From contig NC_083409.1 in the NCBI RefSeq assembly GCF_020745735.1, positions 10,700,978 to 10,764,977 of the forward strand: a stretch of DNA of 64,000 nt, read 5' to 3'. The position numbers and the translations under genes were made by a program. The stretch is from Hemiscyllium ocellatum (Eukaryota). This document shows, piece after piece, positions 20,240 through 64,000 of this stretch; within the stretch, counting starts at the first letter, position 1, and every line of letters starts with the position of its first letter. The notes below the pieces were generated by a model. The model had not been told where the DNA came from. It saw nothing but the letters and a program-made list of their open reading frames with translations, and made no database searches.

Positions 20240-20680
20240 TATTGGGAAGATCAAAGCCATTCCCTTCAGCTCCTGGTATAAACTCCATCCCTCTCCCTGA
20301 GCACTATCTGCTGCTCAACCAGACTCTTTACAAACTTGGCCTCATCTTTGAGGCTGATCTGAGCACCATATCCTCCATCCACAAAGATCAGCCACTGAAA
20401 ATGTCTGTCATGTCCATGGGACTCCAAACATGACCATGCCAATGTTGTGCTTGCACACATCACAGCCACTGCCCTCCGTAACCTTCAGCTCATCCCAAAT
20501 TCTGCTGCCCATATCCAAACTCGCACCAAATCCCATTCCTCCAACCTCCTGCACCCTGTGCCTACATTGGCTCCTGGTCCAGCAACATCTCGATTTTCAA
20601 ATTCTCATCCTTGTTCTCAAGTCCCTCCCTGTCCTCCACTCTCCCTATCTCTGTAACCTCCTCCAAACTGCCTCACTCAG
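20240..20680 (+). mobile_element. L2 LINE 3' fragment
   Basis: LRNLQLIPNSAAHIQTRTKS; LHWLLVQQHLDFQILILVLKSL. Confidence 0.75.
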
Positions 20681-20879
20681 TGTGATCAACAATCTTGGAT
20701 ATATGGCTGTCTATTCCTTCATCCAAGTCATTTAGAAATATCGTGAAATGCTGAGGTTCTAGCCCAATTCCCTGGGGACACCACTATCCACATTTTGCTC
20801 ATTGGAGAGCGCACACATTATCCCTCCTCTCTGTCTCCTCCCTCCAAACTAATTTCTGACCAAAGATAAATATTTTTCC

Positions 20880-42470: not shown

Positions 42471-43049
42471 TTACTACACATCGCCCGGCCCTGTATGTGG
42501 AAATTATTTGAGGAGTTTTTAATTTATATTTTAAAATTTGCTGCTGGTCTTTAGTTTTTAATCTGTAAAATATTTCCGTCCAGGAGACAGAGAATGTGCC
42601 AGCACAGGAGGAGGCTGTTCAGCCCCTCGTGTCAGTGCTAGCTGTTTACGAACCTCAATCACAATGAACATCTCCATTGAATGTCTGTTGTCAGGAAGTG
42701 ATTGAGTCTGTTTTTAGAGACAGAATAACGGACAAATATGAACTGGTCCGAGAGAGTCAGCCTGGATTGACAAAGGTTCAGACATCTTTAACTAACCGGA
42801 TTACACTTTGTTAGGAGCTCACTAATGTGGGATATAAGGGAATGTCGATGGCTATTGTCTATAGGGAATTCCAAAAGATATTTAAGAATGTTCCACAAAA
42901 GAAACATTGATTCAGATCTTACACTCCACAACCATCTGATGAAGGAGCAGCGCTCCAAACGCTAATGCTTCCAAACAAACCTGTTGCATTAGAATCTGGT
43001 GTTCTGTGATTTTTAACATTTACATAACAGTCCAACACCGGCATCTCCA

Positions 43050-44000
43050 AATCATGGAATTGGATGGAATTTGAGAAATGCATTTACGTTGGGTCAGGAA
43101 TGAGTCTGTCTAGCAGACAGAGAGGAAGGATAATGTGCATGTGTTCCAATGAGCCAGATGTGAGTAGTGGTATTCCCAGGGATCTGTGCTGGGACCACAG
43201 CTTTTCACGATATTTCTCAGTGACTTGGATGAAGAAACAGAGAGCCGTATATCCAAGATTATTGATCACACTGAGTGAGGCAGCTTGGAGGAGGTCACAG
43301 AGATAGGGAGGGTGGAACAACAGGGAGCAGATTGAGAACAAGGATGGGAATTTGAAAATCGAGGTGTTGCTGGACCAGGAGCTGATGTCAGTCAGCTAGG
43401 ATTGTGTCGGTTATAGTGGGGTGGGGAGGCATGGGCAGGAGTATGGGGTGGACTTGGTGTGAGTTTGAACACAGACAGCAGAGTTTGGAATGAGTTGATG
43501 TTTACGGAAGTCAGTGGCTGTGATGTGGGCCTGGATAACATTGGAATGGTCTCAAAAACATGGTTGAGATTTTCAGTGGCTGATAATTGTGATGTGGAGG
43601 ATTTGGGCCTCAAATCAGCCCCAAAGATGAGGCCAAAGTTGTAAAGAGTCTGGTAGAGCAGCAGACAGTGCTCAGGGAGAGGGATGGAGTTTGTACCGGG
43701 AGCTGAAGAGGATGGCTTTGATCTTCCAATGTGTTTCCCAGTGAGCCTGGCTCCTCAGTCCTGACTGCTCTTAGCTGCTGTGATTGTCACTGATTGGACA
43801 CTTATTATTAGAGATTCTGACCACAGCAGAAAGCCCCAGTGTAAAAAATAACTGCAAAGACTGTCAGAGTACAAGGTTGAAACTTCACCAAGAGAGGAAG
43901 TGAAAGAAGGAGCTCGGAGCAGTTGGGTGTTTGTTACTGAGAGGGGAGAAAACTGTGAACCGTCTGCACTCCCTGGAATCTGACAGCACAGGAGGAGGCC
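43050..44000 (-). repeat. Inverted paralog of 19975-20880 (V-upstream flank)
   Basis: Shared unique core plus the same adjoining L2/CR1 fragments with the same junctions. Confidence 0.92.
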
Positions 44001-44259
44001 ATTCAGCCCATCATGCCTTTGAATGATCCAGTTAATCCCACTGCTCCCCTCTCTTCCCCGTAACCCAGCAAATCTTTCCTTTACAGCTCAATCTCCAATT
44101 CCCTCTATAAACCTCATGTCCACAGAGTGAGACTGCCCTGAACCTGGGCTTCAAATTGGCATCTCATTCATTCATTGGGAGACAAACTGCCTGGGCTGGG
44201 AAATGGAGTTCAGTACCCTGAACATTCCCTCTCCCCTCCTGAGGGACACTTCATTTGGT

Positions 44260-46200
44260 TTTGCATATTCACTTGTGGGAAGTGGGCTTCACCGGCTGGG
44301 CCAACATTTTTTACCCTGTCCTAGTTGCCCTGGAGTAGGTGGTGGGAAGCTGCCATCTTGAATTGTTGTCGTCTACAAGCTGTAAGTTGACCCACAATGC
44401 CAGCATTTTAACCCAGCAAGGCTGAGGGATCAGCGACATATTTCCAAGTCCGGATGCTAAGCTTTTTCGAGGGGAACTTGCAGCTCAGTGTTCCCATGTA
44501 TCTGCTGCTCTTGTTCTAAATGGAAGTGAACGTGGGTTGGAGGGAAACCAAAAGAACTGCAGATGCTGTAAATCTGAGACAAAAATAGAAAGTGCTGGAA
44601 AAGCTCAGCAGGTCTGGCAGCATCTGTGAAGAGAAATCAGAGTTAATATTTCATGCTCAACCAGAAATGTCAATTCTGATTTCTCTCCAAGATGCTGCCA
44701 GACCTGCTGAGCTTTTCCTGCATTTTTATTTTTGTCCATGGGTTTGGAAGGTGCTATCTGAAGATCGGTGATGAATTTCTGCAGTGCATCTTATCATTCA
44801 TATACACACTGCTGCTATGGAGCGTCAGTGACGGTGAGTTTGGATGCTTTGAGAATGCGATGCCAATCAAGGAGTTTGCTTTGCTCTGGATGGTATCAAG
44901 TTTTTTGAGTGGATAAGAAAAGACATAGGATACAATCGACATAGATAGGAATGGGTTTCAAGGGATATGTGTGAAATGCAGGCAAATAAGATGAGTTCAC
45001 TTCAGAAAACCTGGTCAGCATGTAGAAGTTTGGCTTAAGGGTTTGTTTCTGTGCTGTATGACTCTGTGACACTATCAATCTATGAATGTTGTTGGAGCTG
45101 CACCTGTCCAGGCAAGTGGGGAGTATTTGCTCACACTCCTGACTTGGTTGACAGCTTTGGGGATCAGGAGGTGAGTTACTGGATGCAGTATTCCTAGCCT
45201 CTAACTTGCTCTTGTAACCACTGTGTTTCTTTGGTGAATCCAGTTGTGTTTCTGGTCAATGGCACCTCAAGAATGTTCATAGTGGGGATTCAGTGATGGT
45301 AATAGCATTGATTATCAAGGGGCTATGTTTAGATTGTCTTTATTGGTGATGGTGATTGGCTGGCATTTGCATGGCACCAATGGGAAATGTCACTTCTCAG
45401 ACAAAACCTGGATATTGTCCAGATATTGTTGCATTTGCACGTGGACTGAACTTCAGTATCTGGGAGTTGGGAGAGTGCTGAGCATTGTGCAATACGAGTT
45501 TGCCTTGAGTTGCATATCTGTTCGGGGTCTGTCCTATTTAGTACGGTGATAGTACCACACAACACAATGGAGGGGATTCTCAATGTGAAGGTCAGACTTT
45601 GTTTCCACAAGGACTGTGTGATGGTCACTCTTACCAATAATGTCAAGGACAGATGCATCTACAGCCACAAGATTGGTGAGGATGGGGTCAAGCATCTTTT
45701 TCCATCTTTTGGTTCCAGCTGCAGAGCCAGTCCCTCAGCTACATCCATGAGGAACAACCAGCTCGATCAGTAATGCTGCTGCCGAGCCACTCTCAGTGGT
45801 AGAGACATGAAACCCCCCTCAGTGTACACTCTTGCTGTCATCACCCTCAGTGCTTCCTCCAAATATTGTTTCAACATCAGGAGAGACTGATTCATCAGCC
45901 GATGGGAGCAAGATATCTTGTAATCACCAGGAGGTTTCCTCGCCCATGTTTAACCTGGTGTCATGAGTCTTTATAGGGTCCAGAGCCAACTTTGAGACTT
46001 CCCAGGGTAACTCCCTTCTGCTGCAGACCACTGTGTCATCAGCTCTGGGGTCTGCCTTTTGGTGGGACAGGACACATGCAGGGACAGTGATGGTGGGGTC
46101 TGGGACATTGTCTGTAAGGTGTGGTTCTGTGAGTATGGCTGTGTCAGGCTGTTGCTTGAGTCATCTGTAAGAAGCTCTCCTGAATTTGGCACTAGCTCCA
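44260..46200 (-). mobile_element. Second CR1/L2-group LINE family fragment (also at about 19260-19810, 49600-49960, 61660-61990)
   Basis: LTLHSSSVYMNDKMHCRNSSP RT end; EN-like LTLRIPSIVL...; mutual similarity among the listed copies. Confidence 0.6.
44578..44736. repeat. Near-perfect hairpin (about 74-bp arms, 11-nt loop) from Penelope-like termini
   Basis: GACAAAAATAGAAAGTGCTGGAAAAGCTCAGCAGGTCTGGCAGCATC ... GATGCTGCCAGACCTGCTGAGCTTTTCCTGCATTTTTATTTTTGTC. Confidence 0.85.
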
Positions 46201-46451
46201 GATGTCAGTAAGGAGGACAGAGCAGGGTAGACAGGACTGTTTCTGTCATTGTCTTTTCGGTGTCTAGATCGATGCCTGTGGTTCTCATTTCTTTGTTGAA
46301 ACATTGTCATAATTGATACAACTGAGAGCCTTGCTCGGCCATTTCAGAGGGCACTAGAGAGTCAACCACATTGCTAGAGGACAGTGCCGTGTACCTCGGC
46401 AGTACATTCCGACCTCCCCACTTCCCCATTCTGTATATGGAAGGCGGAAGC

Positions 46452-46464
46452 NNNNNNNNNNNNN
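46452..46464. other. Assembly gap, 13 N
   Basis: Run of 13 N. Confidence 1.
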
Positions 46465-47105
46465 TTCAATGATAAACTGGTTCCACTTTCTGCTGTCATA
46501 TTCTGTAGCCCCTGGGCCATCTCAGTGACAACCATCCAGGGCTCAGGGTGGATTCCAGAGCATCTCATTATCCTGACTGTTGTGTTCCTCAGTCCACATG
46601 TGGCTCCAGCAATCTCACTCCATGGTTCTCGTATCAGTGGGAACCATGGGGCTGAAATCTTATCCAAACAGAATCTCATACAGCAGGGAGGCTGCTGGTG
46701 GATCAGAACCCCTTGGATTCAGTCCAGATTCCCACTGTGGCTCTTTCATTCAAACACAGCATTAGCACTTGACACCACATTCAGAGGGCAATCCTGAGAT
46801 GGGGCCAAGTTTGGTTCTTGATTCCAATGTGAGGAAATGGGGGCTGGGTGTGAAATGTCTAGTCTGAAACTGGTGGGGTACTTTATAATGAAGAATAGAA
46901 ACTGATGTCAGAATAAAGTCAGGTGTTGATGGAGTGAGGAATATCTCAGTGATCTGTCTCCAGAATCCACAGCCTACACACATCCTTCTGTCAGACCCTG
47001 AGGCTGAGAAACAGCTCCTTGACATCTAACATTTCTCAACTTTCCCAGAAATGGTGAAATATTTTCTTTGTCAGTGATTCCTGGGACAGGACATATTAAA
47101 AAGTG

Positions 47106-48727
47106 CATTTTAGAATGGATGGATTGAAGATGGCATTGAAGTTATGTAGGGAAGAGGTTTGGAATACTGGAAAGGATGAAAATAGATAAGTCTCCTGGGC
47201 CTGATGGTTTTATCCTAGGATCCCTCTGGGAAGCTAGGGAGGAGATAGCAGAGCCATTGGCCTGGATTTTTATGTTGTCATTGTCAACGGGAATAGTACC
47301 TGAAGACTGGAGGATGGCGAATGTGGTCCCCTTGTTCAAGAAGGGGAGTAGGGATAGCCCGAGTAACTATAGGCCGTGAGTCTGACTTCTGTGGTGGGCA
47401 AAGTCTTAGAGAGAATTATAAGGGATAAGATTTATGAACATCTGGATAGGAATAACGTGATCAAGGATAGTCAGCATGGTTTTGTGAAGGGCAGGTCGTG
47501 CCTCACAAACCTTATTGAGTTCTTTGAGCAGGTGACTAAGGAGGTGGACGAGGGTAAAGCAGTAGATGTTGTGTATATGGATTTTAGTAAGGCGTTCGAT
47601 AAGGTACCCCATGGTAGGCTAATGCAAAACTACGGAGGTATGGCATTGAGGGTGCATTAGAGGTTTGGATTAGAAATTGGCTGGCTGGAAGGAGACAGAG
47701 GGTAGTAGTTGATGGTATAGGTTCATCTTGGAGTGCAGTTACTAGCGGTGTACCTCAAGGATCTGTTTTGGGACCATCGCTTTTTGTTATCTTTATAAAT
47801 GATCTAGAGGAGGGGCTTGAAAGCTGGGTGAGTAAGTTTGCGGATGACACAAAAGTCGGTGGAGTTGTGGATAGTGAGGAAGGATGTGGCAGGTTACAGC
47901 GGGATATAGACAAGTTGCAAAGCTGGGCAGAAAGGTGGCAATTGGAATTCAATGTAGCTAAGTGTGAAGTCATTCACTTTGGTAGGAGTAACAAGAAGAT
48001 GGATTACTGGGCTAATGGTAGGCTACTTGGTAGTGTGGATGAGCAGAGGGATCTTGGTGTCCATGTACACAGATCTCTGAAAGTTGCCACCCAGGTAAAT
48101 AGTGCTGTGAGGAAGGCATATGGTGTACTGGGCTTTATTGGCAGAGGAATTGAGTTCCGGAGTCCTGAGGTCATGTTGCAGTTGTATAAGACTCTGGTGC
48201 GGCCTCATCTGGAGTATTGTGTGCAGTTTTGGTCGCCATACTATAGGAAGGATGTGGAGGCATTGGAACGAGTGCAGAGGAGGTTTACCAGGATGTTGCC
48301 TGGTATGGTAGGAAAATCGTATGAGGAAAGACTGAGGCACTTGGGGCTGTTCTCATTGGAGAAAAGAAGGTTTAGGGGAGATTTGATAGAGGTGTACAAG
48401 ATGATTAGGGGTTTAGATAGGGTAGACACTGAGAACCTTTTACCGCTAATGGAGTCAGCTGTTACAAGGGGACACAGCTTTAAATTAAGGGGTGGAAGGT
48501 ATAGGACAGATGTTAGGGGTAGATTCTTTACACAGCGGGTTGTGAGTTCATGGAATGCCCTGCCAGTAGCAGTGGTGAACTCTCCCTCTTTATGGTCATT
48601 TAAACGGGCATTGGATAGGCATTTGGAAGTTATTGGGCTAGTGTAGGTTAGGTAGGATTCGGTCGGCGCAACATTGAGGGCCGAAGGGCCTGTACTGCGC
48701 TGTATTTTTCTATGTTCTATGTTCTAT
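47106..48727 (+). mobile_element. Young 5'-truncated CR1 (HER1-like) LINE
   Basis: RT spread over ORFs 47176-47379, 47376-47660 and 47768-48646 (QGSVLGP, FADDTK, LEYCVQFWSP); (TTCTATG)n tail; 3' end resembles the SINE tail GGCCGAAGGGCCTGT. Confidence 0.96.
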
Positions 48728-50869
48728 GCTGTGGGAAGGGAACTGTTGCCTCTCAATGACAAAGCCAATGGAAGGATGTGGAGCTGGCAATGTGAAATGT
48801 TAGGGCACAGAGGATGACACCAGAAGCAATTCAATGTTGTCACTCTCTGCTTTGCAATTGCTAAACTAGTAATAATTGGTTTTTGCTCACAATTTGGTCT
48901 CTTGTATTCGATCCACTTGCCTTTCTTGCTTTGCTTCTTTTGACTTGAGTCTGTGGGTAGCTCCATCAAAACCCAATTCCCTCACTCTCATCCAGGCCCC
49001 TGAAGAGATTAGAGACAAAAGAAAGTGCAAATGCTGGAATCCAAGGTTGACAAGCAGGAGGCTGGGAGAACACAGCAAGCCAGGCAGCATCAGGAGGTGG
49101 AGAAATCAATGTTTTGGCTGTAATCCTTCTTCAGGAATGGGGGTGGGTTGGGAGGTGGGGGAATGATGGGGGAGCTGCAGATAAAGGGAGTAGTGGGGGC
49201 AGGGTGGTGAGATGGGGATAGGTGAAGGTAGGTAGAGGATTGGTTGATGGGAGGGATGAATACAAATTACTCTCCATCGACTCATCAGGTCATATTCTCT
49301 ACCATTCTCAACCTATCCCTACCTCAACACCCTGCTCCGCCCCATTCCCTTTATCTCCTTTTCCAATCTTTCCTCATCACAGCCCACTCATTCCAGGGAT
49401 CAATCGGGTAAAATTCCTGTGAACCACCTCCGATGCATTTATATTCTTCCTTCAATAGGGAGACCAAAACTACCCTCAGTATTTGAGATGTGGTCACACC
49501 AATGTCCAGGAATAACTGAAACATCGCAGTCTCACTTTCTGGTCCTTAAGCACGTTTACACTCTCTTGTACCAGGCTTTTTACTGTCCATCTCTAATTGC
49601 CCTGGACCTGGTGGTGATTAGCTGCCATCTTGAACCCCTGCAGTCAGTCTGCTGTTGGTAGACCCACAATGTCATAGGAGGGGAATTCCAGGATTGTGAC
49701 CCAGTGATGATGTAGGAACTGCTTCATATTTCCAAGTCAAACTGGTGAATGACTTGGAGAGGAACTTGCTGGGGTGATGGTCCCGTGTACCTGCTGTCCT
49801 TGTCCAAATATAAGTGGTCATGGGTTTGGAAGCTGTTGTCTCAGGATCTTTGGTGAATCTCTGCAGTGCATCTTGTAAATAGTACACAGAGCTGTTACTG
49901 AGCGTCGGTGTGGGGGAATGCATGTGTGTGAATGTGGTTCCAATCAAGCGGGTAAACTTGTTTTCAACAAAATTTAAATAAAATAATATAAAACAGCATA
50001 AAATTAAATAAAATATAATTTTGCTGCCTTTTTGATAAAACATCACTGAACCCAAAAGTTAAACCTCCTCTCCCACAGAGGCTGCACCCTTTCTCCAGCA
50101 TCGTGCTTCTATTTGAGATTTGCAGTATTTTGTTTATGTATCTGTGTTAATGCCATTGGTTATAAGAGAAGCATTGGTCAGCACACTGGGGAGAGTTTCC
50201 CTGAGATGGTCACAAAGCCCTTATATTCACATCGACCTGAGAGGGCAGTGGTTTAACCGATCATCCAGCAGATGGCGTCTTTGCCTTTGCCAGCCTCAGG
50301 ACAGTGCTCCAGTGTCTGGAGTGGGGCTTGAAACCTGCAGGTTCAGGTGACGGTGTTATCACTGAACCCATCTATTCTTTTCTGGGATGTGGGAGTCACT
50401 GGCAAGACCAGCATTTGTTCCCCATCCCTACCTGTCCTGAAACTGAGTGGCTTCTTTAGCCTTTTAAATGGCAGGTAAGGGTCAGCCACATTACTGGAGT
50501 GCTGTTTTGTACATTCTGTGATACATGGAGACTCTGTCAGTATTGGGTATCGCAAGGTATGTTCCCTCCATTGAACACTTTCCAACACACTCTCTCCATC
50601 TTTCTTTACTCCTTATTGACTCTTCTACAATTGTCCCTGTTCCCCAACCCGCCCGGTCCAGAGGGATTGATGGCCGGAGTTCATGACCCCGCACTGTGTG
50701 AAGGTTGGTGTGAAGTGAGGCCAGTGTGTTGGAGATTGGGCTCCTGCCTCAGGACCAGGTGTTGGGGCCTGTTCAACAATCTGCACATTGTCCTTTTCCT
50801 CTTTCTGAATGAACTGGATCAAGTTGCAGTAAGAGCTGGCGACAAGGTGTCTTGTCTAAAATGTTTCCA

Positions 50870-51960
50870 GCATTGGGCACAGAACTGGCTGAGTAGGAGG
50901 AGACAGAGGGCAGTGATGGGGGGATGGTTTTCAGAATGGAGGGCTGTGACTCGTGGTGTTCCACAGGGAACTCTGCTGTATATGGTCTACATAAATGATT
51001 TGGAGGAAAGCGTAGCTGGTCTAATTAGTAATTTTACAATTGATACAAAGATTGGTAGAAGTGCAGAGAATGAGAAGGATTATCTAGGATATAGCAGGAT
51101 AGAGATAGGATGCTTGGACAGAAAAATGGCAGGTGTAGTTTAATCCAGACAAATGTGAGGTGATGCATTTTGGAAGGTGATGTACAGGTGGGAATTATAC
51201 AGTGAATGACAGAATCCTTTGGAGTATTGATATGCAGAGGGATCTGGGTGTGTATGTTCACAGATCACTGAAGGTGCCAGCACAGGGAGGTAAGGCAGTA
51301 AAAAAGGCTGATGGCCTGGTTGCCTTCATTGGAGGGGCATTGAGTGTAAGGACAGACAAGTTATGCTGCAGCTTTATAGAACTTTAGTTCGGCCACACTT
51401 GGAATAGTGCACACAGTTCTGGTTGCATAGAACTGCACACAGTCCAAAAAGAAGGATGTGGATGTTTTGAAGACGGTGCAGAAAATGTTTACCAGGATAT
51501 TGTCTGGTATGGGGGGATTGTAGTTCTGAAGAAAGGTTGGAGAGACTGAGTTTGTTTTCACTGGAATGCAGGAAAATGAGGTGCGTCCTGATAGAAGTTT
51601 ACAGAGTTGTGAATGGGATAGGCAGAGTGGAAATAATGAGACTTTTTCCCAGGGTGGAGGGGGTCAAATACTAGGGGACGCAGGTTCAAGGTGCAGGGGT
51701 TTGGGGGAATTCATTGTAAAGAGGTGTACAAACCAAGTATTTCACACAGAGGAAGTTGACTACCTGGAACACACAGCCAGAGGAGGGGGTGGAAGCAGAC
51801 ACAATAGAAGTATTCAAGAAATTCCTGCACTAATGCATGAATAGGAAGGGAATAGAGGGATATGAATCCTGTCGATGAAGATAGTTTCAGTATAGAAGGG
51901 CAAAATGTATCAGCACAGGCTTGGAGGGCGAAGGGCCTGTTCCTGTGCTGTATTGTCCCT
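50870..51960 (+). mobile_element. CR1 RT/3' fragment (inverted paralog at about 54150-55120)
   Basis: WRAVTRGVPQG...YINDLEE; mirrored copy on the other arm. Confidence 0.8.
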
Positions 51961-52544
51961 TGTTCTTTGGTCCCTGCTGTTGAATTGGATTCTCGGGAGC
52001 CAGCTCCATATGAAGAGCCTGTTCTCATTCTTTTGTTGGAGTTCATGGGGCAGCTGCTGCTTCCTTGTTACGTCACTGATCAAACCAACAATGGGGAAAG
52101 CCTCTTGATATTTTAAATACACTGTCTGCAGGAAAATGTTTGGCTGAGGTTTTAATATTGTTTAATAAGATAATGACATCAATACACCAGTGTTCTTTAC
52201 GGCTGGGAGCATTTAACATCATAGTCCTTGTTTCAAGTGGACTCTCACTCATGATAATACAGTTTTCAATGTTTCTCTCCCTTTATGTGTTATGAAGAGA
52301 TTTGCCAACATGTTTTGGTGAGGACAGTGCATCTTCATTGGAGGATTGGAAGATGATATCTTCAGGACACACACACTAAACAACCCCACCACCCTGTGGC
52401 CGACCATTTCAACTCCCCATCCACTTGCTAAGGATATGCAAGTCCCTAGGCCTACTCCACCGCCAAATTGAAGCCATCTAACAACTGGAGGAAGAACACC
52501 ACATCTTCCACCTTGAGACCCTCCAATGACACGGAATGAATGTT

Positions 52545-53160
52545 ATAGAGTCATAGAGTCATAGAGATGTACAGCATGGAAATAGACCCTTCAGTCCAAC
52601 CCGTCCATGCCGACCAGATATCCCAACCAATCTAGTCCCACCTGCCAGCACCCGGCCCATCTCCCTCCAAACCCTTCCTATTCATATACCCATTCAAATG
52701 CCTCTTAAATGTTGCAATTGCACCAGCCTCCACCACATCTTCTGGCAGCTCATTCCATACACATACCACCCTCTGCGTGAAAAGTTGCCCCTTAGGTCTC
52801 TTTTGTATCTTTCTCCTCTCACCCTAAACCTATGCCCTCTAGTTCTGGACTCCCCAACCACTGGGAAAAGATGTTGTCTATTTATCCTATCCATGCCCTT
52901 CGTAATTTTGTAAAACTCTATCAGGTTATCACTCAGCCTCTGATGCTCCAGGGAAAACAGCACCAGCTGTTCAGCCTCTCCCTGTAGCTCCGATCTTCCA
53001 ACCCTGGCAACATCCTTGTAAATCTTTTCTGAACCCTTTCAAGTTTCACAACATCTTTCCGATAGGAAGGAGACCAGAATTGCATGCAATATTCCAGCAG
53101 TAGCCTAACCAATGTCCTGTACAGCCGCAACATGACCTCCCAACTCCTGTACTCAATACT
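52545..53160 (-). mobile_element. CR1 3' fragment
   Basis: YRSWEVMLRLYRTLVRLLLEYCMQFWSP; GAGTCATA tail. Confidence 0.88.
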
Positions 53161-53164
53161 CTGA

Positions 53165-53470
53165 ATGTTGATGTTACTTGTTTCCTCATCTCCACTCCCC
53201 CAGCTTATCCCAGATCCAACCCTCCAACTCGGCACCACCCTTTTGAACTGTCCTACCTGTCCATCTTCCTTCCCACCTATCCACTCCACCCTTCACTCTG
53301 ACCTATCACTGTCACCCCCCCACCTCCACGTACCTATTGCAATCTTCATTACATTTTCCCCAGCCCCAATTCCCTCCTATTTATCTCTCTGACTCCTCAC
53401 TCCCTCCTCTCCATTCCTGATGAAGAGCTTATGCTCAAAACGTCGACTCTCCTGCTCCAGGGATTCTGCC
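53165..53470 (+). mobile_element. Penelope-like terminal repeat fragment with a mutated hammerhead core
   Basis: CTGATGA-A-GAGC-TTAT-GCTC-AAAACGTC at 53417-53444 (G12 replaced by A). Confidence 0.7.
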
Positions 53471-55584
53471 TAACCAGCGCTACATGATTTCACTCTGTGC
53501 TGTGGTAACAGTGTGTTAAAGCCCAGTGCAGGTCATCCGTCATCTCAATCAGATCACAGGGTCTAAGGTGGGTCAGTAATGTCTGGCCCCAGAACAATAA
53601 CACTGACTGACTGGAGACAACCCAGATCAAGTCCCAGTGAGAGTGTTATTGACCTTCACACTCAAAGCCCACCAAGGAGGTGGTTGTTGTTAGTTTCAAT
53701 GTTGCCACAGATTAAATTCTCCCAGAGATTCATAATTCATTCCAGATTTTAAACAAGGGAGGGATGTTGTGGGGAGACAGATGGGAAGGCATGGAGAGGA
53801 AACAAAAAGGAGAGAGAATTGCCCTTCTGTTACACTGTTCATGAGCTCAGGATGTTCAAAGATGTTTTACAGCTAATGGAGAAATTCCAAAGTCTAGTCA
53901 TTGTTGTAATATGGGCGGGGGAATGACAGCTCCCCGAACAGAAGGAATGCAAAAACTGCTATCACTATGAGAGTGGAAAGGTCGGGTGGAGACAATGACA
54001 GTGACACCCTCCACAGAGAGAGAGGGGAAAGTACGCAGACACATTTAAAAACTGTATTAACACAAGTGAGAAATCAAACAAACACCCACTTCATCATGAG
54101 TCTTCCTGCATTGTTGGTTTGAATCCAATTCAACAGCAGGGACCAAAGAACAAGGAACTATACAGCACAGGAACAGGCCCTTCGGCCCTCCCAGCCTGTG
54201 TTGACACATTTTGCCCTTCCTCACCGAAACTGTATTCACCTACAGGATTCATATCCCTCTATTCCCTTCTTTTCCGTGTATTCATCCAGGTATTTCTTGA
54301 ATGCTGCTATTGTGTCTGCTTCCACCACTTCCACTGGCAGCGTGTTCCAGCCCTCACCACCGTTTGTGTGAAATACTTACCTCACACATCTGTTTTAATT
54401 CCCCACTGCACCCACCCACCCCTCCCACACCTTGTACCTGTGTCCCCTAGTAACTGACCCCTCTACCCTGGGAAAATCCCTCATATCAGACAGCATTCTT
54501 GGTACATTTTTTCAGTACCCTCTCCAAAGCATCCACATCCTTCTGGTCATGGTGACCAGAACCATATGCAATATTCCAAGTGTGGCCAAACTAAAGTTCA
54601 GTAAAGCTGCAGTATAACTTGTCTATCCTAATACTCAGTGCTCCTCCCAATGTAGCCAAGCCTGCCATTGCCTTTTTTACTACCTTAGGTGCTGCCACCA
54701 TCAGTGATCTGTGAACATGTACACCCAGATCCCTCTGCATTTCAATACTCCAATGGATTCTGCCATTCACTGTGCAGGTATTCTGCCACGTGCTTCATCT
54801 TTCAAAATGCATCATTTCACATTTATTTGGATTAAACTTCATCTGCCATTTTCTATCCATGCATCCAATTGATCTATGTCCTGCTGTATCCTCTGATAAT
54901 CTGATCATTAACTGCAACTCCAGCAATCTTTGTGGCATCCACAAACTCATGAATTAGACTAGCCATGTTTTCGTCCAAATCACTTATGGAGACCATGGAC
55001 AGCAAAGGTACCATCATTGATCCCTGCAAAACCCCACAAGACACAGCCCTCCATTCTGAAATCCATCCTTCCATCATACCCTCTGTCTCCTCTGACACAG
55101 CCAGTTCTGTCCAATGCTGGGAACATTTTAGACAAGACACCTTGTTGCCAGATCGTTACTGCAACTTGATCCAGTTCATTCAGAAAGAGACAAAGGACAA
55201 TGTGCAGATTGTTGAACAGGCCCCTACACCTGGGCCTGAGGGAGGGGCCAAGCTCCAATACACTACACATGAAATTAAGACAGAGTGGGGTCATGACGTC
55301 TGTCCATATGTTCCTTTGGGACCGGAAAGGAGTGAGGAAATAGAGGCAATTGTAGAAGAGTCAATAAGGATTAAAGCAAGATGGAGAGCGCGTTTTGGAA
55401 AGGGATTAGTGGAGAAAATATACTTTTTGCCACCCAACGTTGACATAGTCTCCGTGTATCACATCATGAATAAAATAGCACACTGTGAGGACAATCAAAA
55501 GTTACACCAAAGTGCTTATTTTTGATATATCACAGCATGCAGAGCATTTTTATTGTGGTGCAATTAGGTATCCTGGTTCAAAAG

Positions 55585-55585
<1 letters not shown>

Positions 55586-55622
<37 letters not shown>
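55586..55622 (+). repeat. (CT)n microsatellite
   Basis: Direct reading. Confidence 0.95.
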
Positions 55623-55626
<4 letters not shown>

Positions 55627-57650
55627 GTTTGTACAGATCAGCTGGTTCGATCCTCACAGAGCCCCAGTTTATTTGGACTGTTCAGTAATGTGGAAATGTC
55701 GATGGTGGACTGGGGTACACCTGATAAAGGAGCAGCGCTTCAGAAGCTTGTGATTTCAAATGAATCAGTTGGGCTAGAACCTGGTGTAGTGAGTCCTCTG
55801 ACTTTGTATTGTTCAGGCACAGTGAAACAGCTGCTTTCTAGTTACTATGGAGGACTTGCACAGCTGCTGAAGACTATGGGTAATGACTCCTTCCATTAGC
55901 TGCAAACACACCAGTAGTCATTCCAGTGGATTCCAGTGGGAATGACCAATCAGTTGCTTTGACCTAGTTCCCCAGTTAATCAGGCCATGGCTGACCTGGA
56001 ATACATTCTCCCTTTGTCCTGTAAACCGTACTGCCCTGAGAAAATGGATATTGAAACCCAACCTCAACAGCTTTTTATTTTGGATTGAGGGTTCCAGATT
56101 TCCATCACTCTGTCGGAAAGAAATTTTCCTGAAATCGTCTGAATTACAATTTTAACAACCCTCTTGTTCTGGACTCTGGGACTGGAAAAACAATTTACAT
56201 CAACACTGTTCATCACCTCTGGGGAAAAGTCTCACTGATGTAACCTGTTCTTTCTCATTACCAGTTTCTGATCTGAAGGTGACATCACAGGCTGGATACT
56301 GAGAGGGTGGATCCTGTTATCGGGCAGACGAGGACTGGAGGGCAGGTTTTAACACAAACCAGTCTCCAGTTTAAAGGGAAGGAGGGTTTTCTTGCTGAGG
56401 ATTGATAGTCTGTGGAATTCTCTTCTCTACATGGGGATGGAGGTTCACTCATGGAGTTGGCACAAGGTTACAGTCGACAGACTTTTTGATGAACAAGGCA
56501 ATTAAGGATAATGGGAGGGGGTGGGGAAGCAGAAAGTACGGGCGAGACCATAACCAGATGAGCAGTGATCTTTCATTGGCACAGCAGCTCCCAAAAGGCC
56601 TGCTCCTGCTCCTGGGCCCTATGTTCTGACAGAGGCTGCAGCAATCTGGACCCCCATCTTTCCTTTGTCACTCACTGACAAAAAATGTAATTTAAAATGA
56701 AAATTATTTTTTTGAACAAGACCAACTCAATTCTTGTTGCAGTCATTTTCTTTGCTGGCTTTTAATTTCAACAGGGTTTTAGAAACACGTCATTTGTCTT
56801 ATGTTGCAGTGGAGACAGACACAAGGCAGTGAGGCCTCAGAGAACACCGAGAGCTTTCACTCTGCACAACAAGGCTGTCAGCACAAGCATCTGGTGACAG
56901 GATTGTAGGGGTTGAAAAGGAGAGAGTCACGGAGAAAAGAGACCTTATAGTTCAAAATAAAACCTCTTCTATATTCCCACACTTTAATGAATTAATGTTA
57001 GAGGATTAGAAACCCAGACGGTGAGAGTGTGCTGGCTCAGAGGCTAAAAGGCAGAGAGCAAGGAGCTGCATTATTCCTTCTCATTATTATTTCTGCTTCA
57101 TCATTGGTGAGCTTCATAAATATTGCCCACCCCCAGTTGCTTGGACGAAGTTCTTTGCTGAGCCAGATCATGGGGTCATTAAAAATGGATCATGTCACGG
57201 TGGGGCAGGAGTCACAGACCAGGCACCCTCGCCAAAAGAACATTTGTGAACATCACATTGAATTTCATGTCTTTTTTTGTACAAATTCCAGCGCCTTCCT
57301 TTCCAGATATTACATGGCTCCACCCGCCCTCTCCAGGACAATTAGGGGAAGGCAACCAATAACCAACACGTCAACGCCCGCCCCATCCGGGAGAAATCAG
57401 GAGAAATGATGTAAAATTAAAATGATCAAACTGGTGAGGCTTGAATTCATCTCTTTGAAAGACTGGACTCTCGGTCAGAAACAGAGCCATGACATGGGTG
57501 AACCTGGTTTGTCAGACTGAAAGGTGGAGAGTCCTTTGGATTGACGCTGGGATCAGCAAAAAAATGAATTGCACTCAAAGATTGAACAAACAGCTATCAA
57601 AGTGGGTCACCAAACTGCAGAGTACAGCACTTGCAGCGACGCGTCCCCAC

Positions 57651-57958
57651 CACGGTGGCACAGTGGTTAGCACTGCTGTCTCACAGCGCCTGAGACCCGG
57701 GTTCAATTCCCACCTCAGGCGACTGACTGTGTGGAGTTTGCACGTTCTCCCCGTGTCTGCGTGGGTTTCCTCCGGGTGCTCCGGTTTCCTCCCACAGTCC
57801 AAAGATGTGCGGGTCAGGTGAATTGGCCGTGCTAAATTGCCCGTAGTGTTAGGTAAGGGGCAAATGTAGGGGTGGGGTGGGTTGCGCTTCGGCGGGTCGG
57901 TGTGGACTTGTTGGGGCGAAGGGCCTGTTTCCACACTGTAAGTAATCTAATCTAATCT
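57651..57958 (+). mobile_element. HE1/V-SINE, well preserved
   Basis: A box TGGCACAGTGG, B box GGTTCAATTCC, V-domain, (TAATC)n tail. Confidence 0.95.
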
Positions 57959-58789
57959 CTCTCCTTGCTGTTGCCCTCCCTAACTGTCCTGGAGAGGGCG
58001 GTGGTGAGCCATGAGTTTCTCGAAGAGAATCTGACAGAGGGACAAGGTCATGTCCTCGGCCTGAGCACAACTGCCTGACCTGCTGTGCTTTTCCAGCACC
58101 ACACTTTTTGACTCTGAGTAAACTATCCTTCAGGAGAATGAGCTGTGGCACATGGGAAAACCTGGGAGTATTGGAAAGGCATCAGCAGCCTGGTCAGCCT
58201 GCAGAGGGGCAGAAACAGATTTGATGAATGAGATGATATCCTTTCAGAGCTACACAGTTTACATTGTTACTGACGGTGACTCCATGGGCAATGCTCCTGC
58301 TTCAGAGTCAAATGGTCATTGCATTGAAAGCCACCTCAGAAATGAGAACACAGAATCCAGGCTGAGACTGCAGTGAACTCTGACACAATGTTATGTATGG
58401 GATGTTCATTTAAAGCCCCACCAGCACCACCCAGACCCCAATCCCTCCACCTCAGGGGGCTCGACAAGATCCCATTCTGAAGAGATTCCCTCAGGTATCC
58501 TGCTCAATATTCAACTAATGCCACCAAAAGGATTTGTCTCATCATTCGTTTGCTGATTTTGGGACCTCAGCATTTTGTCTTGTGAAGGTGATTGCACTGT
58601 GCAGGCAGCTTTAAATATCCTGGGACGATTACAAAATAACACTGCACCAACAAGTGTTCTCTCTTCCTGTCACATAACAGGGGAGTAAATCAGTAACTGA
58701 AAATCCACACTGAAGGCAAACACTGAAGCTTCAGCTGAAAGGCTTTTTGCACCACGTTAACCTGCGCCCTGGGCATTTCCTTCCAGTGT

Positions 58790-60320
58790 CCGAGATCGTT
58801 ACCAGGCTGGGATGGAGGCTTACAGGAGGCTGGAAGAACACAGCAAGTCAGGCAGAATCTGGAGGTGGAGCAGTCAACATTTCGGGTATAACCCTTCTTC
58901 AGAACTGCAGGTGGGGGTAGGGGGAGCTGCAAATCAAGGTGGGATCGGTTGTTTGCGTGGGTGGAGGGGAATGGTGGAGTGGAAGGTATTGATGGATGAA
59001 CACAGGTAGAGGGTTGGAAGTGCTTAGTCGATGGGAGGAATGAATCCATTTGGTGGCTGGAAGGGAGGGTCCGTAAGTGGAATAGAATGGAGGAGGGGGA
59101 CTGGAAAGGGAGTCGAAAGTTGGGAAAGGCAGGCTTTTTGAAACTGGAGAACTCAATGTTGATTCCTCTGGGTTGTAAGCAACCCCGGGCAAAAGATAAT
59201 TATTTGTTCCTCCAATTTGCAGTCTGATTGCTTATGGTAATGGAGGAGGCAGAGGATAGTCATGTCAGAGAGGGAATAGGAAGGGGAATTGAAATAGGCA
59301 GTGACTGGGAGGCCAGGTCAGCCTTTGTGAGCCTGGCTGAGATGCTCATCAAAACATGTCCTTAGTTTACGTTTGGTCTCACCGATGCAGAGAAGACCAC
59401 AACGGGTGCACCGGATACAATAAACTAGGTTGGAGGAGAGGCAGGTGAACCTCTGTCTGACCTGGAAGGACTGGGGCCCTGGATGGAAATGACAGGGTTT
59501 GGTGTGTGGGCAGGTTTTGCATCTTTTACAGTTGCAGGGGAAGGTACCAGGGTTTTGTTGGGGGAGGAGGGGGTAGGTGTGAAGTGTGGTGAAAACCAAG
59601 GATTGGCAAAGGGAACAGTCCTTGTGGAAGGCAGAGGGGGTGGGGGGGGAAGGGAAGATGTTCTTGATAGTGGGGTCGAGCTGGAGTTGTCAGAATTGTT
59701 TGAGGATGATACGTTGGATGCGGAGATTGATTGGACGTAAGGTGAAGACAAGGGGGACCCTGTCTCTATTGCATTTTGGAGGGGAGTGTTTAGATTTGGG
59801 GAGCAGAGAATGGAGGAGGTGCGGTGGAGGGCTTTCTGGATGGCAGAGGTGGGAAAAGTACATTGTTCAAAATAAGTGGACATCTGGGACACTTGGGAGG
59901 GGAGCATCTCCTCGTTCGAGCAGATATTACGGAGATGGAAGAATTGGGAAAACGGGGTGGTGTTCTTGCAGGATACTGGTTGGGAGGAGGTGTTGACCAG
60001 GTAGTTGTGTGAGTCTGTGGATTTACAGTAAATGTCTGTTCCTAGACTGTCACCGGAGATGGAAATGGGGCGGTCAAGAAAGGAGAGGGATTTGTCCAAG
60101 ATAGACTACGTGAATTTGAGGGCAGGTTGGAAGTTGTTAGCAAAGTTGATGAACAGCTCCAGTTCAGCCTGAGTGCAGGATGCAGCACTGATGCAGTCAC
60201 TGATGTAATGGTGGAAGATTTGGGGAACGGTGCCTGTGCATGTACTGGTGAGGTGTTGTTTGATGTAGCCGACAACAAGCAGACATAGCTGGGACCCATG
60301 GCCACCCACTGGATTTGGAG
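58790..60320 (-). mobile_element. Penelope-like element: RT C-terminal half, GIY-YIG endonuclease, terminal repeat
   Basis: FINFANNFQPALKFT; LSFLD...TDIYCKSTDSHNYL...PFSQF; FTCLSSNLVYCIRCTRCGLLCIGETKRKL...EH. Confidence 0.9.
58870..58908 (-). ncRNA. Minimal type I hammerhead ribozyme in the Penelope terminal repeat
   Basis: GCAGUU-CUGAAGA-A-GGGU-UAU-ACCC-GAA-AUGU-U/GACUGC: core intact, 4-bp stem II, 6-bp stem I, self-complementary stem III. Confidence 0.7.
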
Positions 60321-60599
60321 GAAATGGGAAGAGTTGAAGGAAGCTGACAGATCACATGGAAATGTTTGGAAAAGGTTCACAAGGACACAGTCCAGGCTTC
60401 CTGCAAATATCAGCCTTCCTTCTATTGAAGTGCTTCTTCATAGGAGCTTCTCTATGGCGGTTTCAAGTACACATCTCCGTGGAAATATCACAGACTTTCT
60501 GAAATGGAATGAACTGAAAGAAGAGAAGGAAATGGGAAGAATTAACCAGACAAGGGTGAGCATCAAGAGAGATGGGAGTGTGTGGGAGACTCTGTGCCA

Positions 60600-61090
60600 T
60601 TAAAAAATCCCAAAGGAGTTTCACAAGAAAAGCTCAAATCTTTACAAGGATATAACAGGGAGATGACTTACTGACATCAAACAGGTTGGGTGTTAGGGAC
60701 CCTGTGCCTCTGGTGCCTAACTCTATATGAGACAACAGTCAAGGATGGTTGATGTGTAAATAAAGGGTGACTTGATGATGTGGAGTTATTTCATGATCAA
60801 TGACCGCGGGCATAGATTTAAGGGAAATGGCAGAAGATTAAGAGGGAATGTGAGGAAACACGCTTTCATGCAGAAGGTGGTGGTAATTTGTAACTTGCTT
60901 TCTGTAAGGGTAGTTGAGGCAGAAGCTCTCCCATAACATTGATGTACTTTGATGTGCAGCTGTGATGCCAAGGTTTACAGGGCTGCGGGCCAACTGCTGG
61001 AACATGGAATTAGAATAGTGAGGTGGTTGTTCGACTGGCTTTGGCTCATTGGGCCGAAGGGCCTTGTTCTTGTAGACCTGTTGTAGATGT
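60600..61090 (+). mobile_element. CR1 3' fragment
   Basis: Degenerate RT C-terminus and GGGCCGAAGGGCCT tail. Confidence 0.7.
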
Positions 61091-62069
61091 CTGACTCTGC
61101 CAGGACTCCAGCAATGTGGCTGACCCTTACCTGCCATTTGAAAGGCCGAGCAAGCCACTCAGTTTCAGGGCAGTTAGGGATGGGGAACAAATGCTGGTCT
61201 TGTCAGTGACACCCACATCCCAGGAAAGAATAGACGGCCTCAGTGGTAACACCGTCACCTGAACCTGCAGGTTTCAAGCCCCACTCCAGACACTGGAGCA
61301 CTATCCTGAGGCTGGCAAAGGTAAAGACGCCATCTGCTGGATGATCGGTTAAACCACTGCCCTCTCAGGTCGATGTGAATATAAGGGCTTTGTGACCATC
61401 TCAGGAAACTCTCCCCAGTGTGCTGACAATGCTTCTCTATATAACAGATACAAGAGTAAAATACAGCAAATCTCAAATAAAACAAGATGCTGGAGAAAGG
61501 GAACAGGTGCAGCCACATTAGAGAGAGGAGGTAATAATGTTTTGGATTCAGTGATGTTTTATCAAAAAGAAGCCACAGTTTTTGATGATTTTATTTCATT
61601 TTAACCTGTTTTATGTTATTTTATTTTATTTAAATCTTGTTTATCAAATTTCAGCCGGCTTGATTGGCACCACATCGACATATATCCATTGCCCCACACT
61701 GACCCTCAGTAACAGCTGTGAGCACTATCTACAAGATACATTGCAGAGGTTCAGCAAAGATCCTGAGAGAGCACCTTCCAAACCCATGACCACGTCCATC
61801 AAGAAGGACATGGTAGCAGATACACAGGAACACCACTCTTTGCAAGTTCCCTCATTGAAATATATCGCTGTTCCTACATTGTTATTGGGTCAGGCTCATG
61901 GAATTCCCTTCCTCCGCACATTGTGGGTCTACCTACAGCACACAGACTGTAACAGTTCGAGAAAGCAGCTCAGCGCCACTGTGTACATGACAATGAGAGA
62001 TGGACAGTAACAAGGCTGGTGCAAAGTAAGAGCAGGTGTGATTAGGGATCTGAAAGTGAGAATGTGATG

Positions 62070-64000
62070 TTTCAGTTCCTCCTGGACATCTCAAGGTTTG
62101 TATGAACTTTTGGTCTCCTAATTGCAGAAAGAATATAAATCCATTGGAAGTGTTTCAGAGGAGTTTTTCCGACTGATCCCTGGTATGAGGGGGCTGTGTG
62201 GTGAGGAAGGATCGGAAAGGCTGGCCTTGATCTCACTGGGAGTTTCAAGAGTGGGGGGTTTTCCTGTCCCACTGTATTCTCCAAACCCTTATCTGACCCC
62301 CTCTTGGGTCATACCCTCCTGCCCCTTACTAACATGGAATTGGACTGCCCAGTCCTGAGGCTTACACCTTCCATCTGGAACAAAGTCTCCAGGTAGCTCT
62401 GACCCTCCCTGATGTATCAGGATTCTTACAACTCAGCTTCCAATCCAAACCCCTGAGTGGGAGTTGCTGTAGATTTATACAGTCACTACAGATGTATTTA
62501 CCCTGAATCATTTCAGTTTAATGAACAAATGCTGATCCACTTACAAATGAAAGAAATCAATTCTTTCATGAAACTAGTAATTGTCCTCAGTCTCTGGATC
62601 AATGTTTCAGTACTTTTCATTTCTAGGATTTCCCTATTTGAGGTTTCCTAAGCATACTATTGATATATGGTTCCTTACACAAAGCTCTTCCCAGCTGATC
62701 TGGTCAACAGACTCCTGTCCCCTTGTTTATTATTTTGCTATTTTCAAACCAAGTGCATGTGCAGGCTCCCATCAGCTGAAGTGACAGTTCCAAACCAGTT
62801 TGGAAAAGCAAAGGTAGACCTCCTTCCCCAGTTCACCGAACTCCCACATTGACCAAACCTCCCAGCATCCCCTCTGTGCCAGCTGCACTGAGTGCCAACT
62901 GCAGGATATAGGCTGCCCTGTATTTATTACTGGTGCTAATTGATATCACTTTGTTCTGTCGTGCTATTAGAGTCATAGAGACAGCACAGAGACAGAACCT
63001 TCGGTTCAACTTGTCCACGCTGACCAGATATCCCAACGCAATCTAGTTCCACTTGCCAATGCTCAGGATCTGGGTTAAGTTAGATCATTTCTCAGTCTGA
63101 AGCTTCCTTCTTTCAGCCTGAGAAATACGTTACTTTTATAACCAACAAATGTGACTTTAATGCTGGAATCTGTTTTGAAGATTAATGGGCTCAATGGTTT
63201 GATTCAATGTGGTAAGATAAGAAATATCTGTGTCACTTGCTGTAATTCAGTCTTCTCTAACCAATCTCTTCAGGGGCCAGGATGAGTGTGAGGAGATTGG
63301 GTTTTGATGGAACTACCACAGACTCAAGTCAAAAGAAGCAAAGCAAGAAAGACAGGTGGATCGAATACAAGAGAGCACATTATGAGAAAAACCAAAGGAG
63401 AGAGTGACAACATTGAATTGCTTCTTGTGTCATCCTCTGCGCCCTTACGTTTCACAGTGTCAGCTCCACATCCTTCCATTGACTTTGTCATTGAGAGCCA
63501 ACGGTTCCTTTCCCACAGCCCTTTTTAAAATGCCTGCCCCCAGGGAATCACTCAGACAGAGAATATTTCACCTTTTCTGGGAAGGTTGGAGAAATATTGG
63601 ATGTCGATGAGCTGCTTTCTCAGACTTCAGGGTCTGACAGAAGGATGTGTGTAGGCTGTGGATTCTGGAGACAGATCACTGAGATGTTCCTCACTCCCAT
63701 CAACACCTGACTTTATCCTGAAATCAGTTTCTATTCTTCATTATAAAGTACCCCCACCAGTTTCAGACTAGACATTTCACACCCAGCCCCCATTTCCTCA
63801 CATTGGAATCAAGAACCAAACTTGCCCCATCTCAGGATTGCCCTCTGAATGTGGTGTCAGTGTGCTAATGCTGTGTTTGATGAAAGAGCCACAGTGGAAT
63901 CTGGGACTGAATCCAAGGGGTTTCTGATCCACCAGCAGCCTCCTTGCTGTGTGAGATTCTGTTTGGATAAGATTTCAGCCCCATGGTTCCCACTGATACG
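62070..64000 (+). repeat. Direct copy of 1-1934 (offset about 62,069 bp)
   Basis: About 99% identity by eye; differences are mostly 1-bp homopolymer indels. Confidence 0.97.

What the first reader, a model, noticed from the sequence alone, without database searches (positions are those of the whole stretch)
43050..52125. Footprints of an oppositely oriented kappa cluster on both sides of the gap: alternating head-to-head and tail-to-tail clusters
Seen: the sequence 5-6 kb upstream of V (19975-20880) recurs inverted at 43050-44000. The sequence starting 1.28 kb downstream of the C stop (2098 downward) recurs inverted starting exactly at the first base after the gap (46465). The order 5' flank -> gap -> 3' flank is what a plus-strand L-V-J-C cluster would give, yet no such exons are assembled. 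The inverted 3' flank then mirrors 54035-64000 about an axis near 53.1 kb. Inference: clusters here alternate in orientation, and one or two plus-strand clusters are missing from the assembly (15 kb or more if collinear). Facing clusters with V-12 and J-23 signals could in principle recombine between clusters.
Basis: partly seen in the sequence, partly recalled or inferred. Interest (0 to 1): 0.75.

Follow-up and report, generated by a model that had tools for sequence, protein, structure and literature searches.

The report
Inverted kappa-cluster flanks at assembly joint
Both sides of a 13-letter assembly joint in a shark antibody light-chain locus carry real, mirror-image copies of the DNA that normally lies in front of and behind a kappa gene cluster, but no gene pieces are assembled there, the joint looks like an unresolved contig junction, and so a "hidden" cluster is plausible but unproven and the layout is ordinary for this locus.

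Summary
The window holds one shark-type kappa cluster, A, on the minus strand (V with a 12-spacer signal, J with a 23-spacer signal, C exon). Its upstream flank (19976-20883) recurs inverted at 43995-43070. Its downstream flank (2098-1441) recurs inverted at 46466-47119, one base after the 13-N run. That copy continues to 51992 and mirrors 54121-64000 about ~53.06 kb.

Neutral parts of both mirror pairs are equally old (K2P 0.17-0.25). A 261-bp upstream core and a 540-bp tail block stay at 96-97%. This fits one old inverted duplication of a whole cluster unit.

No plus-strand V, J, C or recombination signal is assembled. The 2.45 kb between the upstream copy and the joint is transposon mosaic, not collinear with A.

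The two sides of the joint are not continuous. Thirteen N is, however, the Bionano mark for overlapping contigs or a small undetermined gap, so "15 kb missing" is not supported.

1-1934 equals 62070-64000 at 99.4%, and the differences are mostly homopolymer indels.

My odds: a cluster body, whole or partial, unassembled at the joint 0.4; exon-less relic 0.2; contig-overlap artefact 0.15.

The scan noted opposite-facing kappa clusters and 13-N-hinged duplications on other DNA of this genome. Ordinary; low interest.

The parts
3382..3711 (-). Reference cluster A: kappa-like C exon (C1-set), stop codon at 3382-3384
   Evidence: Pfam C1-set E = 9.8e-23; ORF and translation
13848..13924 (-). Cluster A: J segment (reads LTFGKGTKLRL) with a perfect 23-spacer signal at 13886-13924
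14333..14892 (-). Cluster A: leader exon (ATG at 14892), V exon (about 14658-14361) and a perfect 12-spacer signal (14360-14333). The V is one base out of frame as assembled.
   Evidence: Pfam V-set E = 2.2e-16; sequence; signal
19976..20883 (-). Cluster A's upstream flank, 5.1-6.0 kb 5' of the leader. It is the template of the inverted copy. The core 19976-20236 carries an ETS/IRF-type composite site.
42606..42845 (+). Outer piece of the head-to-head arm: inverted copy of 27328-27566 (84.5%)
43070..43734 (+). Inverted copy of A's upstream flank, neutral part (matches 20883-20237; 79-81%, K2P 0.23-0.25)
43735..43995 (+). Conserved upstream core module in plus orientation (matches 20236-19976; 95.8%, K2P 0.043). 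Homology ends sharply at 43995.
   Evidence: Many public contigs of the same or a close species match this core at 90% or more, so it is a multi-copy family.
43996..46451 (.). Transposon and repeat mosaic up to the left contig end. It has no Ig exon or signal and is not collinear with A. It includes a very abundant hairpin element (44578-44736) and a mid-copy repeat (45560-46036).
46452..46464 (.). 13-N joint between two contigs. The flanks are not continuous.
   Evidence: Meaning of 13 N: bioRxiv 10.1101/2020.12.28.424581 and 10.1101/2025.01.22.633974
46466..47005 (+). Conserved 3' tail block in plus orientation (matches A 2098-1560; 96.6%, K2P 0.035). It starts one base after the joint.
47006..47119 (+). 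Continuation of the tail at neutral divergence (matches 1559-1441; 79%)
47122..48728 (+). LINE insertion found only in this tail copy. It has reverse-transcriptase ORFs. 48053-48728 is 96-97% identical to 30909-31582. It ends in (TTCTATG)3.
   Evidence: Pfam RVT_1
48728..49491 (+). Tail continues: 48728-49022 matches 1454-1184 and 63519-63251; 49360-49491 matches 150-17
49360..51992 (+). Distal tail, the left arm of the tail-to-tail palindrome (matches 62218-61101 and 55481-54121; 80-82%). It has a CTCF-like core at 50265, mirrored at 61340.
51993..54120 (.). Spacer around the mirror axis (about 53,056), with a LINE fragment at 52543-53289
54121..64000 (-). Right arm: 3' flank of a minus-strand cluster that lies beyond the window. 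62070-64000 equals 1-1934 (99.4% at aligned bases).

Best explanation
The two footprints are the surviving outer ends of a plus-oriented kappa cluster unit, here called B.

Inferred history: an old inverted duplication copied a whole unit (upstream module, V-J-C, 3' tail). This put copies tail-to-tail, and after further duplication of the pair, head-to-head. Transposons then filled the flanks. Two short non-coding blocks, a 261-bp upstream core and a 540-bp block 1.3-1.8 kb behind C, stayed nearly unchanged, either through selection or through gene conversion among clusters.

Shown: the assembly breaks exactly where B's body should be. The right contig begins inside the conserved tail block. 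The left contig ends in a mid-copy repeat 2.45 kb past the upstream core. The two were then abutted with the 13-N mark used for contigs that overlap or have a small undetermined gap.

My commitment: cluster-like sequence continues beyond 46465 in the real genome (about 0.75). A whole or partial V-J-C body at this joint has odds of about 0.4. The '15 kb missing' figure is not established. Nothing here shows recombination between clusters.
For: - Repeats and coordinates.
- Equal age of both mirror pairs, with islands kept: K2P is 0.17-0.25 in neutral parts against 0.035-0.043 in the two blocks.
- Each footprint lies in one contig with its mirror partner, because the window has only one N run.
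- Homology at 96.6% runs to the second base of the right contig, while the left edge matches nothing in A's 2099-3381. The contig start therefore looks arbitrary within a longer homologous stretch.
- One public contig (X19, record 12) runs 78 letters past 46451 without fitting 46465 onward.
- Public contigs near both contig ends differ from the window by many gap letters but almost no substitutions. That is typical of poorly polished contig ends (table 8).
- Cluster A shows the full anatomy expected of such a unit.
Against: - No plus-strand V, J, C or signal sequence is assembled.
- 43996-46451 is not collinear with A's upstream region.
- Thirteen N is the Bionano mark for overlap or a small undetermined gap.
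- A collinear body would add about 15.4 kb and, judging by A, four DLE-1 sites between the flanking sites at 45034 and 49545. An optical map would normally size such a gap.
- The assembler and scaffolder of this genome are not known to me, so this argument is conditional.
- The public runs are short contigs and could not bridge or size the joint.
Confidence: 0.6

Rival explanations
1. First reader's version. A complete plus-strand L-V-J-C cluster collinear with A (15 kb or more, possibly two clusters) lies unassembled in the joint, and the clusters alternate strictly in orientation.
For: - The order 5' footprint, joint, 3' footprint is right, and both footprints have the same age.
- Homology runs up to the contig edge.
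- The conserved blocks are kept as in working clusters.
- A public contig continues past the left edge.
Against: - The 13-N mark means overlap or a small gap, not a sized 15-kb gap.
- Four extra DLE-1 labels would be expected from a collinear body.
- The 2.45 kb after the upstream core is already non-collinear.
- Unchecked scan note s1-195871 implies a minus-strand neighbour left of A, so alternation would not be strict.
Confidence: 0.3
2. Exon-less relic. B's body was deleted, possibly as a polymorphic deletion. The contigs nearly abut, and only the upstream module and the tail survive.
For: - The 13-N mark.
- No Ig exon is assembled.
- Transposon mosaic lies next to the upstream core.
- Scan notes report orphan and broken clusters elsewhere in this genome.
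Against: - The deletion edge would have to coincide to the base with a contig start that lies inside a 96.6% identical block.
- The conserved blocks have not decayed although the neutral flanks are about 20% diverged, so any deletion must be recent.
- At least 78 letters follow 46451 that do not fit the right flank.
Confidence: 0.2
3. Contig-overlap artefact. The right contig repeats the last roughly 62,056 bp of the left contig (layout X-Y-13N-Y-Z, period 62,069). Nothing is then missing at the joint. The tail copy belongs to the plus-strand neighbour on A's left and the upstream copy to a different neighbour on A's right.
For: - 1-1934 equals 62070-64000. Ten of 21 differences are indel events, mostly one-base C or G runs, which is the pattern of consensus noise or of two haplotypes.
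- 13 N marks overlapping contigs, and duplicated sequence on both sides of such gaps is documented.
- False duplications at contig boundaries are common in such assemblies (PMC8081667).
- Unchecked scan notes describe several near-identical duplications hinged on 13-N gaps in this genome.
Against: - Only 1.9 kb of the predicted 62 kb can be seen in the window.
- Scan note s1-195871 places two clusters tail-to-tail at -60.4 to -9.2 kb. That does not fit the predicted content of -15.6 to 0 kb.
- A 62-kb overlap is long for this artefact.
Confidence: 0.15

Closest known systems
Cartilaginous-fish light-chain clusters (kappa-like, type III/NS4): many separate V-J-C miniloci
   Same: Cluster A has the classic layout. 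Leader, V with a 12-spacer signal, J with a 23-spacer signal about 0.45 kb away on the same strand, and one C exon.
   Different: The finding itself contains only the flanks of such a unit. No V, J or C is assembled. The J-C intron of A is long (about 10 kb) because of transposon insertions.
Zebrafish IgL clusters with inversional rearrangement between clusters (Zimmerman et al. 2008, PMC3014032)
   Same: Light-chain clusters lie in both orientations on one chromosome, so the 12/23 rule would allow joining by inversion.
   Different: In zebrafish, V-J-C transcripts that leapfrog a C were shown. Here there are no transcripts, no hybrid joints and not even a facing signal sequence. The same paper records the view that shark rearrangement stays within a cluster.
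Bionano hybrid-scaffold 13-N joints and false duplications at contig boundaries
   Same: The N run is exactly 13 letters. There is a near-identical direct repeat on the two contigs whose differences are dominated by indels. Papers: 10.1101/2020.12.28.424581, 10.1101/2025.01.22.633974, PMC8081667.
   Different: The sequence directly on the two sides of this joint is not duplicated. Whether the 62-kb-period repeat restarts exactly at the joint cannot be seen in the window.
Large inverted duplication of the human IGK locus (proximal and distal V clusters); from my own knowledge, not checked here
   Same: An antibody kappa locus that expanded by inverted segmental duplication.
   Different: The human duplication copies V genes that serve one J-C. 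Here whole V-J-C units with their own flanking control blocks are copied.

Membership tests
Shark-type kappa V-J-C cluster (for the proposed plus-strand cluster B) | V exon (V-set) with a 12-spacer signal | tested here: not met
   tblastn, blastn and a signal scan find only A's V at 14361-14658. Nothing is on the plus strand.
Shark-type kappa V-J-C cluster (for the proposed plus-strand cluster B) | J segment with a 23-spacer signal and a C1-set C exon downstream | tested here: not met
   Only A's J (13848-13885) and C (3382-3711) are found. Unassembled DNA cannot be tested.
Shark-type kappa V-J-C cluster (for the proposed plus-strand cluster B) | Cluster-specific flanks: upstream core about 5 kb 5' of V, and a conserved block 1.3-1.8 kb 3' of C, in the same orientation and order | tested here: met
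   43735-43995 (95.8%) and 46466-47005 (96.6%) are both in plus orientation with the 5' copy before the 3' copy.
Shark-type kappa V-J-C cluster (cluster A, the reference) | L-V(12-spacer signal), J(23-spacer signal) and C on one strand | tested here: met
   The V is one base out of frame as assembled.
Bionano overlap joint with false duplication (X-Y-13N-Y-Z) | N run of exactly 13 | tested here: met
   46452-46464. Convention described.
Bionano overlap joint with false duplication (X-Y-13N-Y-Z) | A near-identical direct copy that ends at the left edge and restarts at the right edge of the joint | tested here: inconclusive
   1-1934 equals 62070-64000 at 99.4%, which fits a period of 62,069. 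The predicted copy start at about -15.6 kb is outside the window. No duplication lies directly at the joint.
Bionano overlap joint with false duplication (X-Y-13N-Y-Z) | Halved read depth on both copies | not testable with these tools
   The available runs are Logan contigs, and their depth is not a copy number.
Inter-cluster inversional V-J joining (zebrafish type) | Facing V (12-spacer signal) and J (23-spacer signal) of different clusters, and V-J-C products that combine them | not tested
   Only one cluster's signals are assembled. No B-cell amplicon or transcript data were examined.

The most novel reading that the evidence does not exclude
A complete, working plus-strand V-J-C cluster sits in the unresolved joint, head-to-head with cluster A about 30 kb away. 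The two exchange segments by inversional V-J joining, as zebrafish clusters do. This would overturn the view that shark light-chain rearrangement is strictly within one cluster.
Probability: 0.04. Interest if true: 0.7.

Novelty: new member of a known kind. Interest (0 to 1): 0.25.

Why it matters
The main value is for curation. This joint, and probably other 13-N joints in the locus, cuts through or next to a light-chain cluster. Counts, orientations and 'dead' calls of shark kappa genes taken from this assembly are therefore unreliable at such places.

Biologically it gives one more example that the array grew by inverted duplication of whole units. It also shows that two short non-coding blocks are kept while everything around them decays. 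That supports the idea, raised elsewhere in the scan, that each cluster carries its own control elements.

It does not make inter-cluster recombination in sharks testable by itself.

Tried and rejected
- **Degenerate Ig exons or signals.** I searched 43-53 kb and the whole window for degenerate V, J, C, leader or signal sequences. Nothing turned up beyond chance-level signal look-alikes.
- **Collinearity left of the joint.** I compared 43996-46451 with A's 14.9-20 kb and with A's 2099-3381 using sensitive blastn. Only transposon matches appeared.
- **Duplication directly across the joint.** None. Only 65-71% transposon matches were found.
- **Tandem repeats at the contig ends.** None.
- **Public reads.** Four runs of the same or a very close species are Logan contigs of 100-450 bp. 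No listed contig bridges the joint, and depth is not a copy number. The reads therefore give no verdict on the gap size.
- **Protein search with the C exon.** It returned only partial shark-like fragments filed under bacteria, plus one catshark fragment. None gave a route to flanking DNA.
- **The 62-kb overlap idea.** I took it seriously but marked it down because scan note s1-195871 does not fit it.
- **Transposon explanation.** I rejected the idea that the upstream footprint is merely a transposon. Its distal 200 bp are LINE-derived, but the remaining 700 bp occur only twice in the window, and the adjoining piece 42606-42845 extends the same inverted arm.
Full report
**What the window holds.** It is a transposon-rich piece of a cartilaginous-fish antibody light-chain locus with a single N run at 46452-46464.
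- One complete kappa-like cluster, here called A, lies on the minus strand.
- Its parts are: leader ATG at 14892; V exon about 14658-14361 (Pfam V-set, E = 2.2e-16); a perfect 12-spacer signal at 14360-14333; a perfect 23-spacer signal at 13924-13886; J at 13885-13848; and a C exon at 3711-3382 (C1-set, E = 9.8e-23).
- The nearest database proteins are shark-like light-chain fragments.
- tblastn and blastn with A's V, C, leader, J and V-J spacer find nothing else in 64 kb.
- A signal scan allowing three mismatches finds only A's two perfect signals plus a few chance-level look-alikes.

**The repeats.** All three are real.
- The upstream flank 19976-20883 (5.1-6.0 kb 5' of the leader) recurs inverted at 43995-43070.
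- The downstream flank 2098-1441 recurs inverted at 46466-47119, starting one base after the N run.
- That copy goes on collinearly: 48728-49022 with 1454-1184, and 49360-49491 with 150-17.
- It mirrors the right end of the window: 49360-50504 with 62218-61101, 50499-51515 with 55481-54478, and 51636-51992 with 54484-54121. The axis is near 53,056.
- A reverse-transcriptase-bearing LINE (47122-48728; Pfam RVT_1) has inserted into this tail copy only.
- The head-to-head arm also reaches further out: 42606-42845 matches 27328-27566.
- The window has one N run only. Each footprint therefore lies in the same contig as its mirror partner, and the opposite orientations do not depend on the scaffold join.

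**Age and conservation.**
- Neutral parts of both mirror pairs are equally diverged. K2P is 0.17-0.25 head-to-head and 0.20-0.24 tail-to-tail.
- Two islands are kept: the 261-bp upstream core (43735-43995; 95.8%, K2P 0.043; it carries an ETS/IRF-type composite site) and the first 540 bp of the tail (46466-47005; 96.6%, K2P 0.035).
- This is what one old inverted duplication of a whole cluster unit would leave. The two blocks were then held by selection or by gene conversion among clusters.
- It argues that a unit B had a body at birth. If the body is gone, it was lost recently.

**The joint: are the two sides continuous?** They are not.
- The right side starts in the middle of a block that in A continues for another 1.28 kb up to the C exon.
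- The left side matches nothing in A's 2099-3381. It is a mosaic of repeats that is not collinear with A's 19975-17500.
- I laid public contigs from four runs on 43500-49400. They fit short pieces at 99-100%, so they come from the same or a very close species. None of the listed contigs bridges the joint.
I did not see or use those letters.
- Near both contig ends the public contigs differ from the window by many gap letters but almost no substitutions. These look like poorly polished contig ends (table 8).

**What 13 N means.**
- Two papers state that Bionano hybrid scaffolding inserts exactly 13 N where two contigs overlap, or where there is a small gap of undetermined size. They also state that duplicated sequence is often left on both sides (10.1101/2020.12.28.424581; 10.1101/2025.01.22.633974).
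- The Vertebrate Genomes Project paper describes false duplications at contig boundaries as one of the commonest errors (PMC8081667).
- If this assembly was scaffolded that way, which I cannot verify, a collinear 15.4-kb body would have been sized as a long gap. It would carry four DLE-1 sites, as A does, between the flanking sites at 45034 and 49545.
- That weakens '15 kb or more missing'. It does not exclude it, because optical-map alignments in repeated arrays are error-prone.

**A second clue.**
- 1-1934 equals 62070-64000 in direct orientation at 99.4% at aligned bases.
- Of the differences, 11 are substitution columns and 10 are indel events. Most indels are one-base changes in C or G runs. 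That is the pattern of consensus noise or of two haplotypes, not of old paralogues.
- This led me to consider that the right contig repeats the last roughly 62 kb of the left contig (X-Y-13N-Y-Z, period 62,069).
- Unchecked scan notes describe several such 13-N-hinged duplications in this genome.
- Only 1.9 kb of the prediction is visible in the window.
- Another unchecked note (s1-195871) places two clusters tail-to-tail at -60.4 to -9.2 kb. That does not fit the predicted content left of the window.
- If that note is right, the neighbour on A's left is also a minus-strand cluster, so alternation is not strict.

**Verdict on mechanism.**
- The footprints are the outer ends of a plus-oriented cluster unit made by an old inverted duplication.
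- The assembly breaks where its body should be, probably because cluster bodies are long near-identical repeats.
- My odds:

| Statement | Probability |
|---|---|
| Cluster-like sequence continues beyond 46465 in the real genome | about 0.75 |
| A whole or partial V-J-C body is unassembled at this joint | about 0.4 |
| An exon-less relic | about 0.2 |
| A contig-overlap artefact | about 0.15 |
| Other misjoins | the remainder |

- Recombination between facing clusters is allowed by the 12/23 rule only in principle. No facing signal is assembled.
- The literature holds that shark rearrangement stays within clusters. Inter-cluster inversion has been shown only in zebrafish (PMC3014032).

**Novelty.**
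- Opposite-facing kappa clusters, conserved upstream and 3' blocks, and 13-N-hinged duplications were all noted by this scan on other DNA of the same genome.
- This finding is one more instance, combined with an unresolved assembly joint.
- It is useful for curating the locus but not surprising.

Noticed in passing
window 14600-14660 (minus strand): Cluster A's V exon is one base out of frame as assembled. The leader splice reads [12 protein letters not shown] and then runs to a stop. The rest of the V domain ([14 protein letters not shown]...[10 protein letters not shown]) is in another frame, and the shift lies at or next to a run of four C at about 14622-14625. This assembly shows many one-base C/G-run differences between near-identical copies, so the shift may be consensus noise and not a dead gene.
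   Followed up: partly
window 1-1934 and 62070-64000: Direct repeat with a period of 62,069 bp, 99.4% identical at aligned bases. Ten of 21 differences are indel events, mostly in homopolymers. It is either a very young duplication, two haplotypes, or one locus assembled twice.
   Followed up: partly
window 50265 (+) and 61340 (-): The only two matches in the window to a CTCF-like core (CCASYAGRKGGCR). They sit at homologous positions of the two palindrome arms and point towards each other across the axis.
   Followed up: no
window 48053-48728 and 30909-31582: LINE pieces that are 96-97% identical, so the LINE family was active recently. The copy in the tail inserted directly after the conserved 540-bp block and ends in (TTCTATG)3.
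   Followed up: partly
window 44578-44736: A 160-bp hairpin element, 86% self-complementary, that is extremely abundant in public contigs of the species. It is probably a miniature inverted-repeat transposon.
   Followed up: no
window 46250-47150: Public short-read contigs agree with the window at almost every base but differ by 6-14 gap letters per 130-230 bp. This suggests many small indel errors in the assembled sequence at both contig ends.
   Followed up: partly
window 22000-38000: GC skew is strongly negative at 22-31 kb and positive at 32-38 kb. This probably reflects long LINE copies in opposite orientations within the spacer between the head-to-head arms.
   Followed up: no
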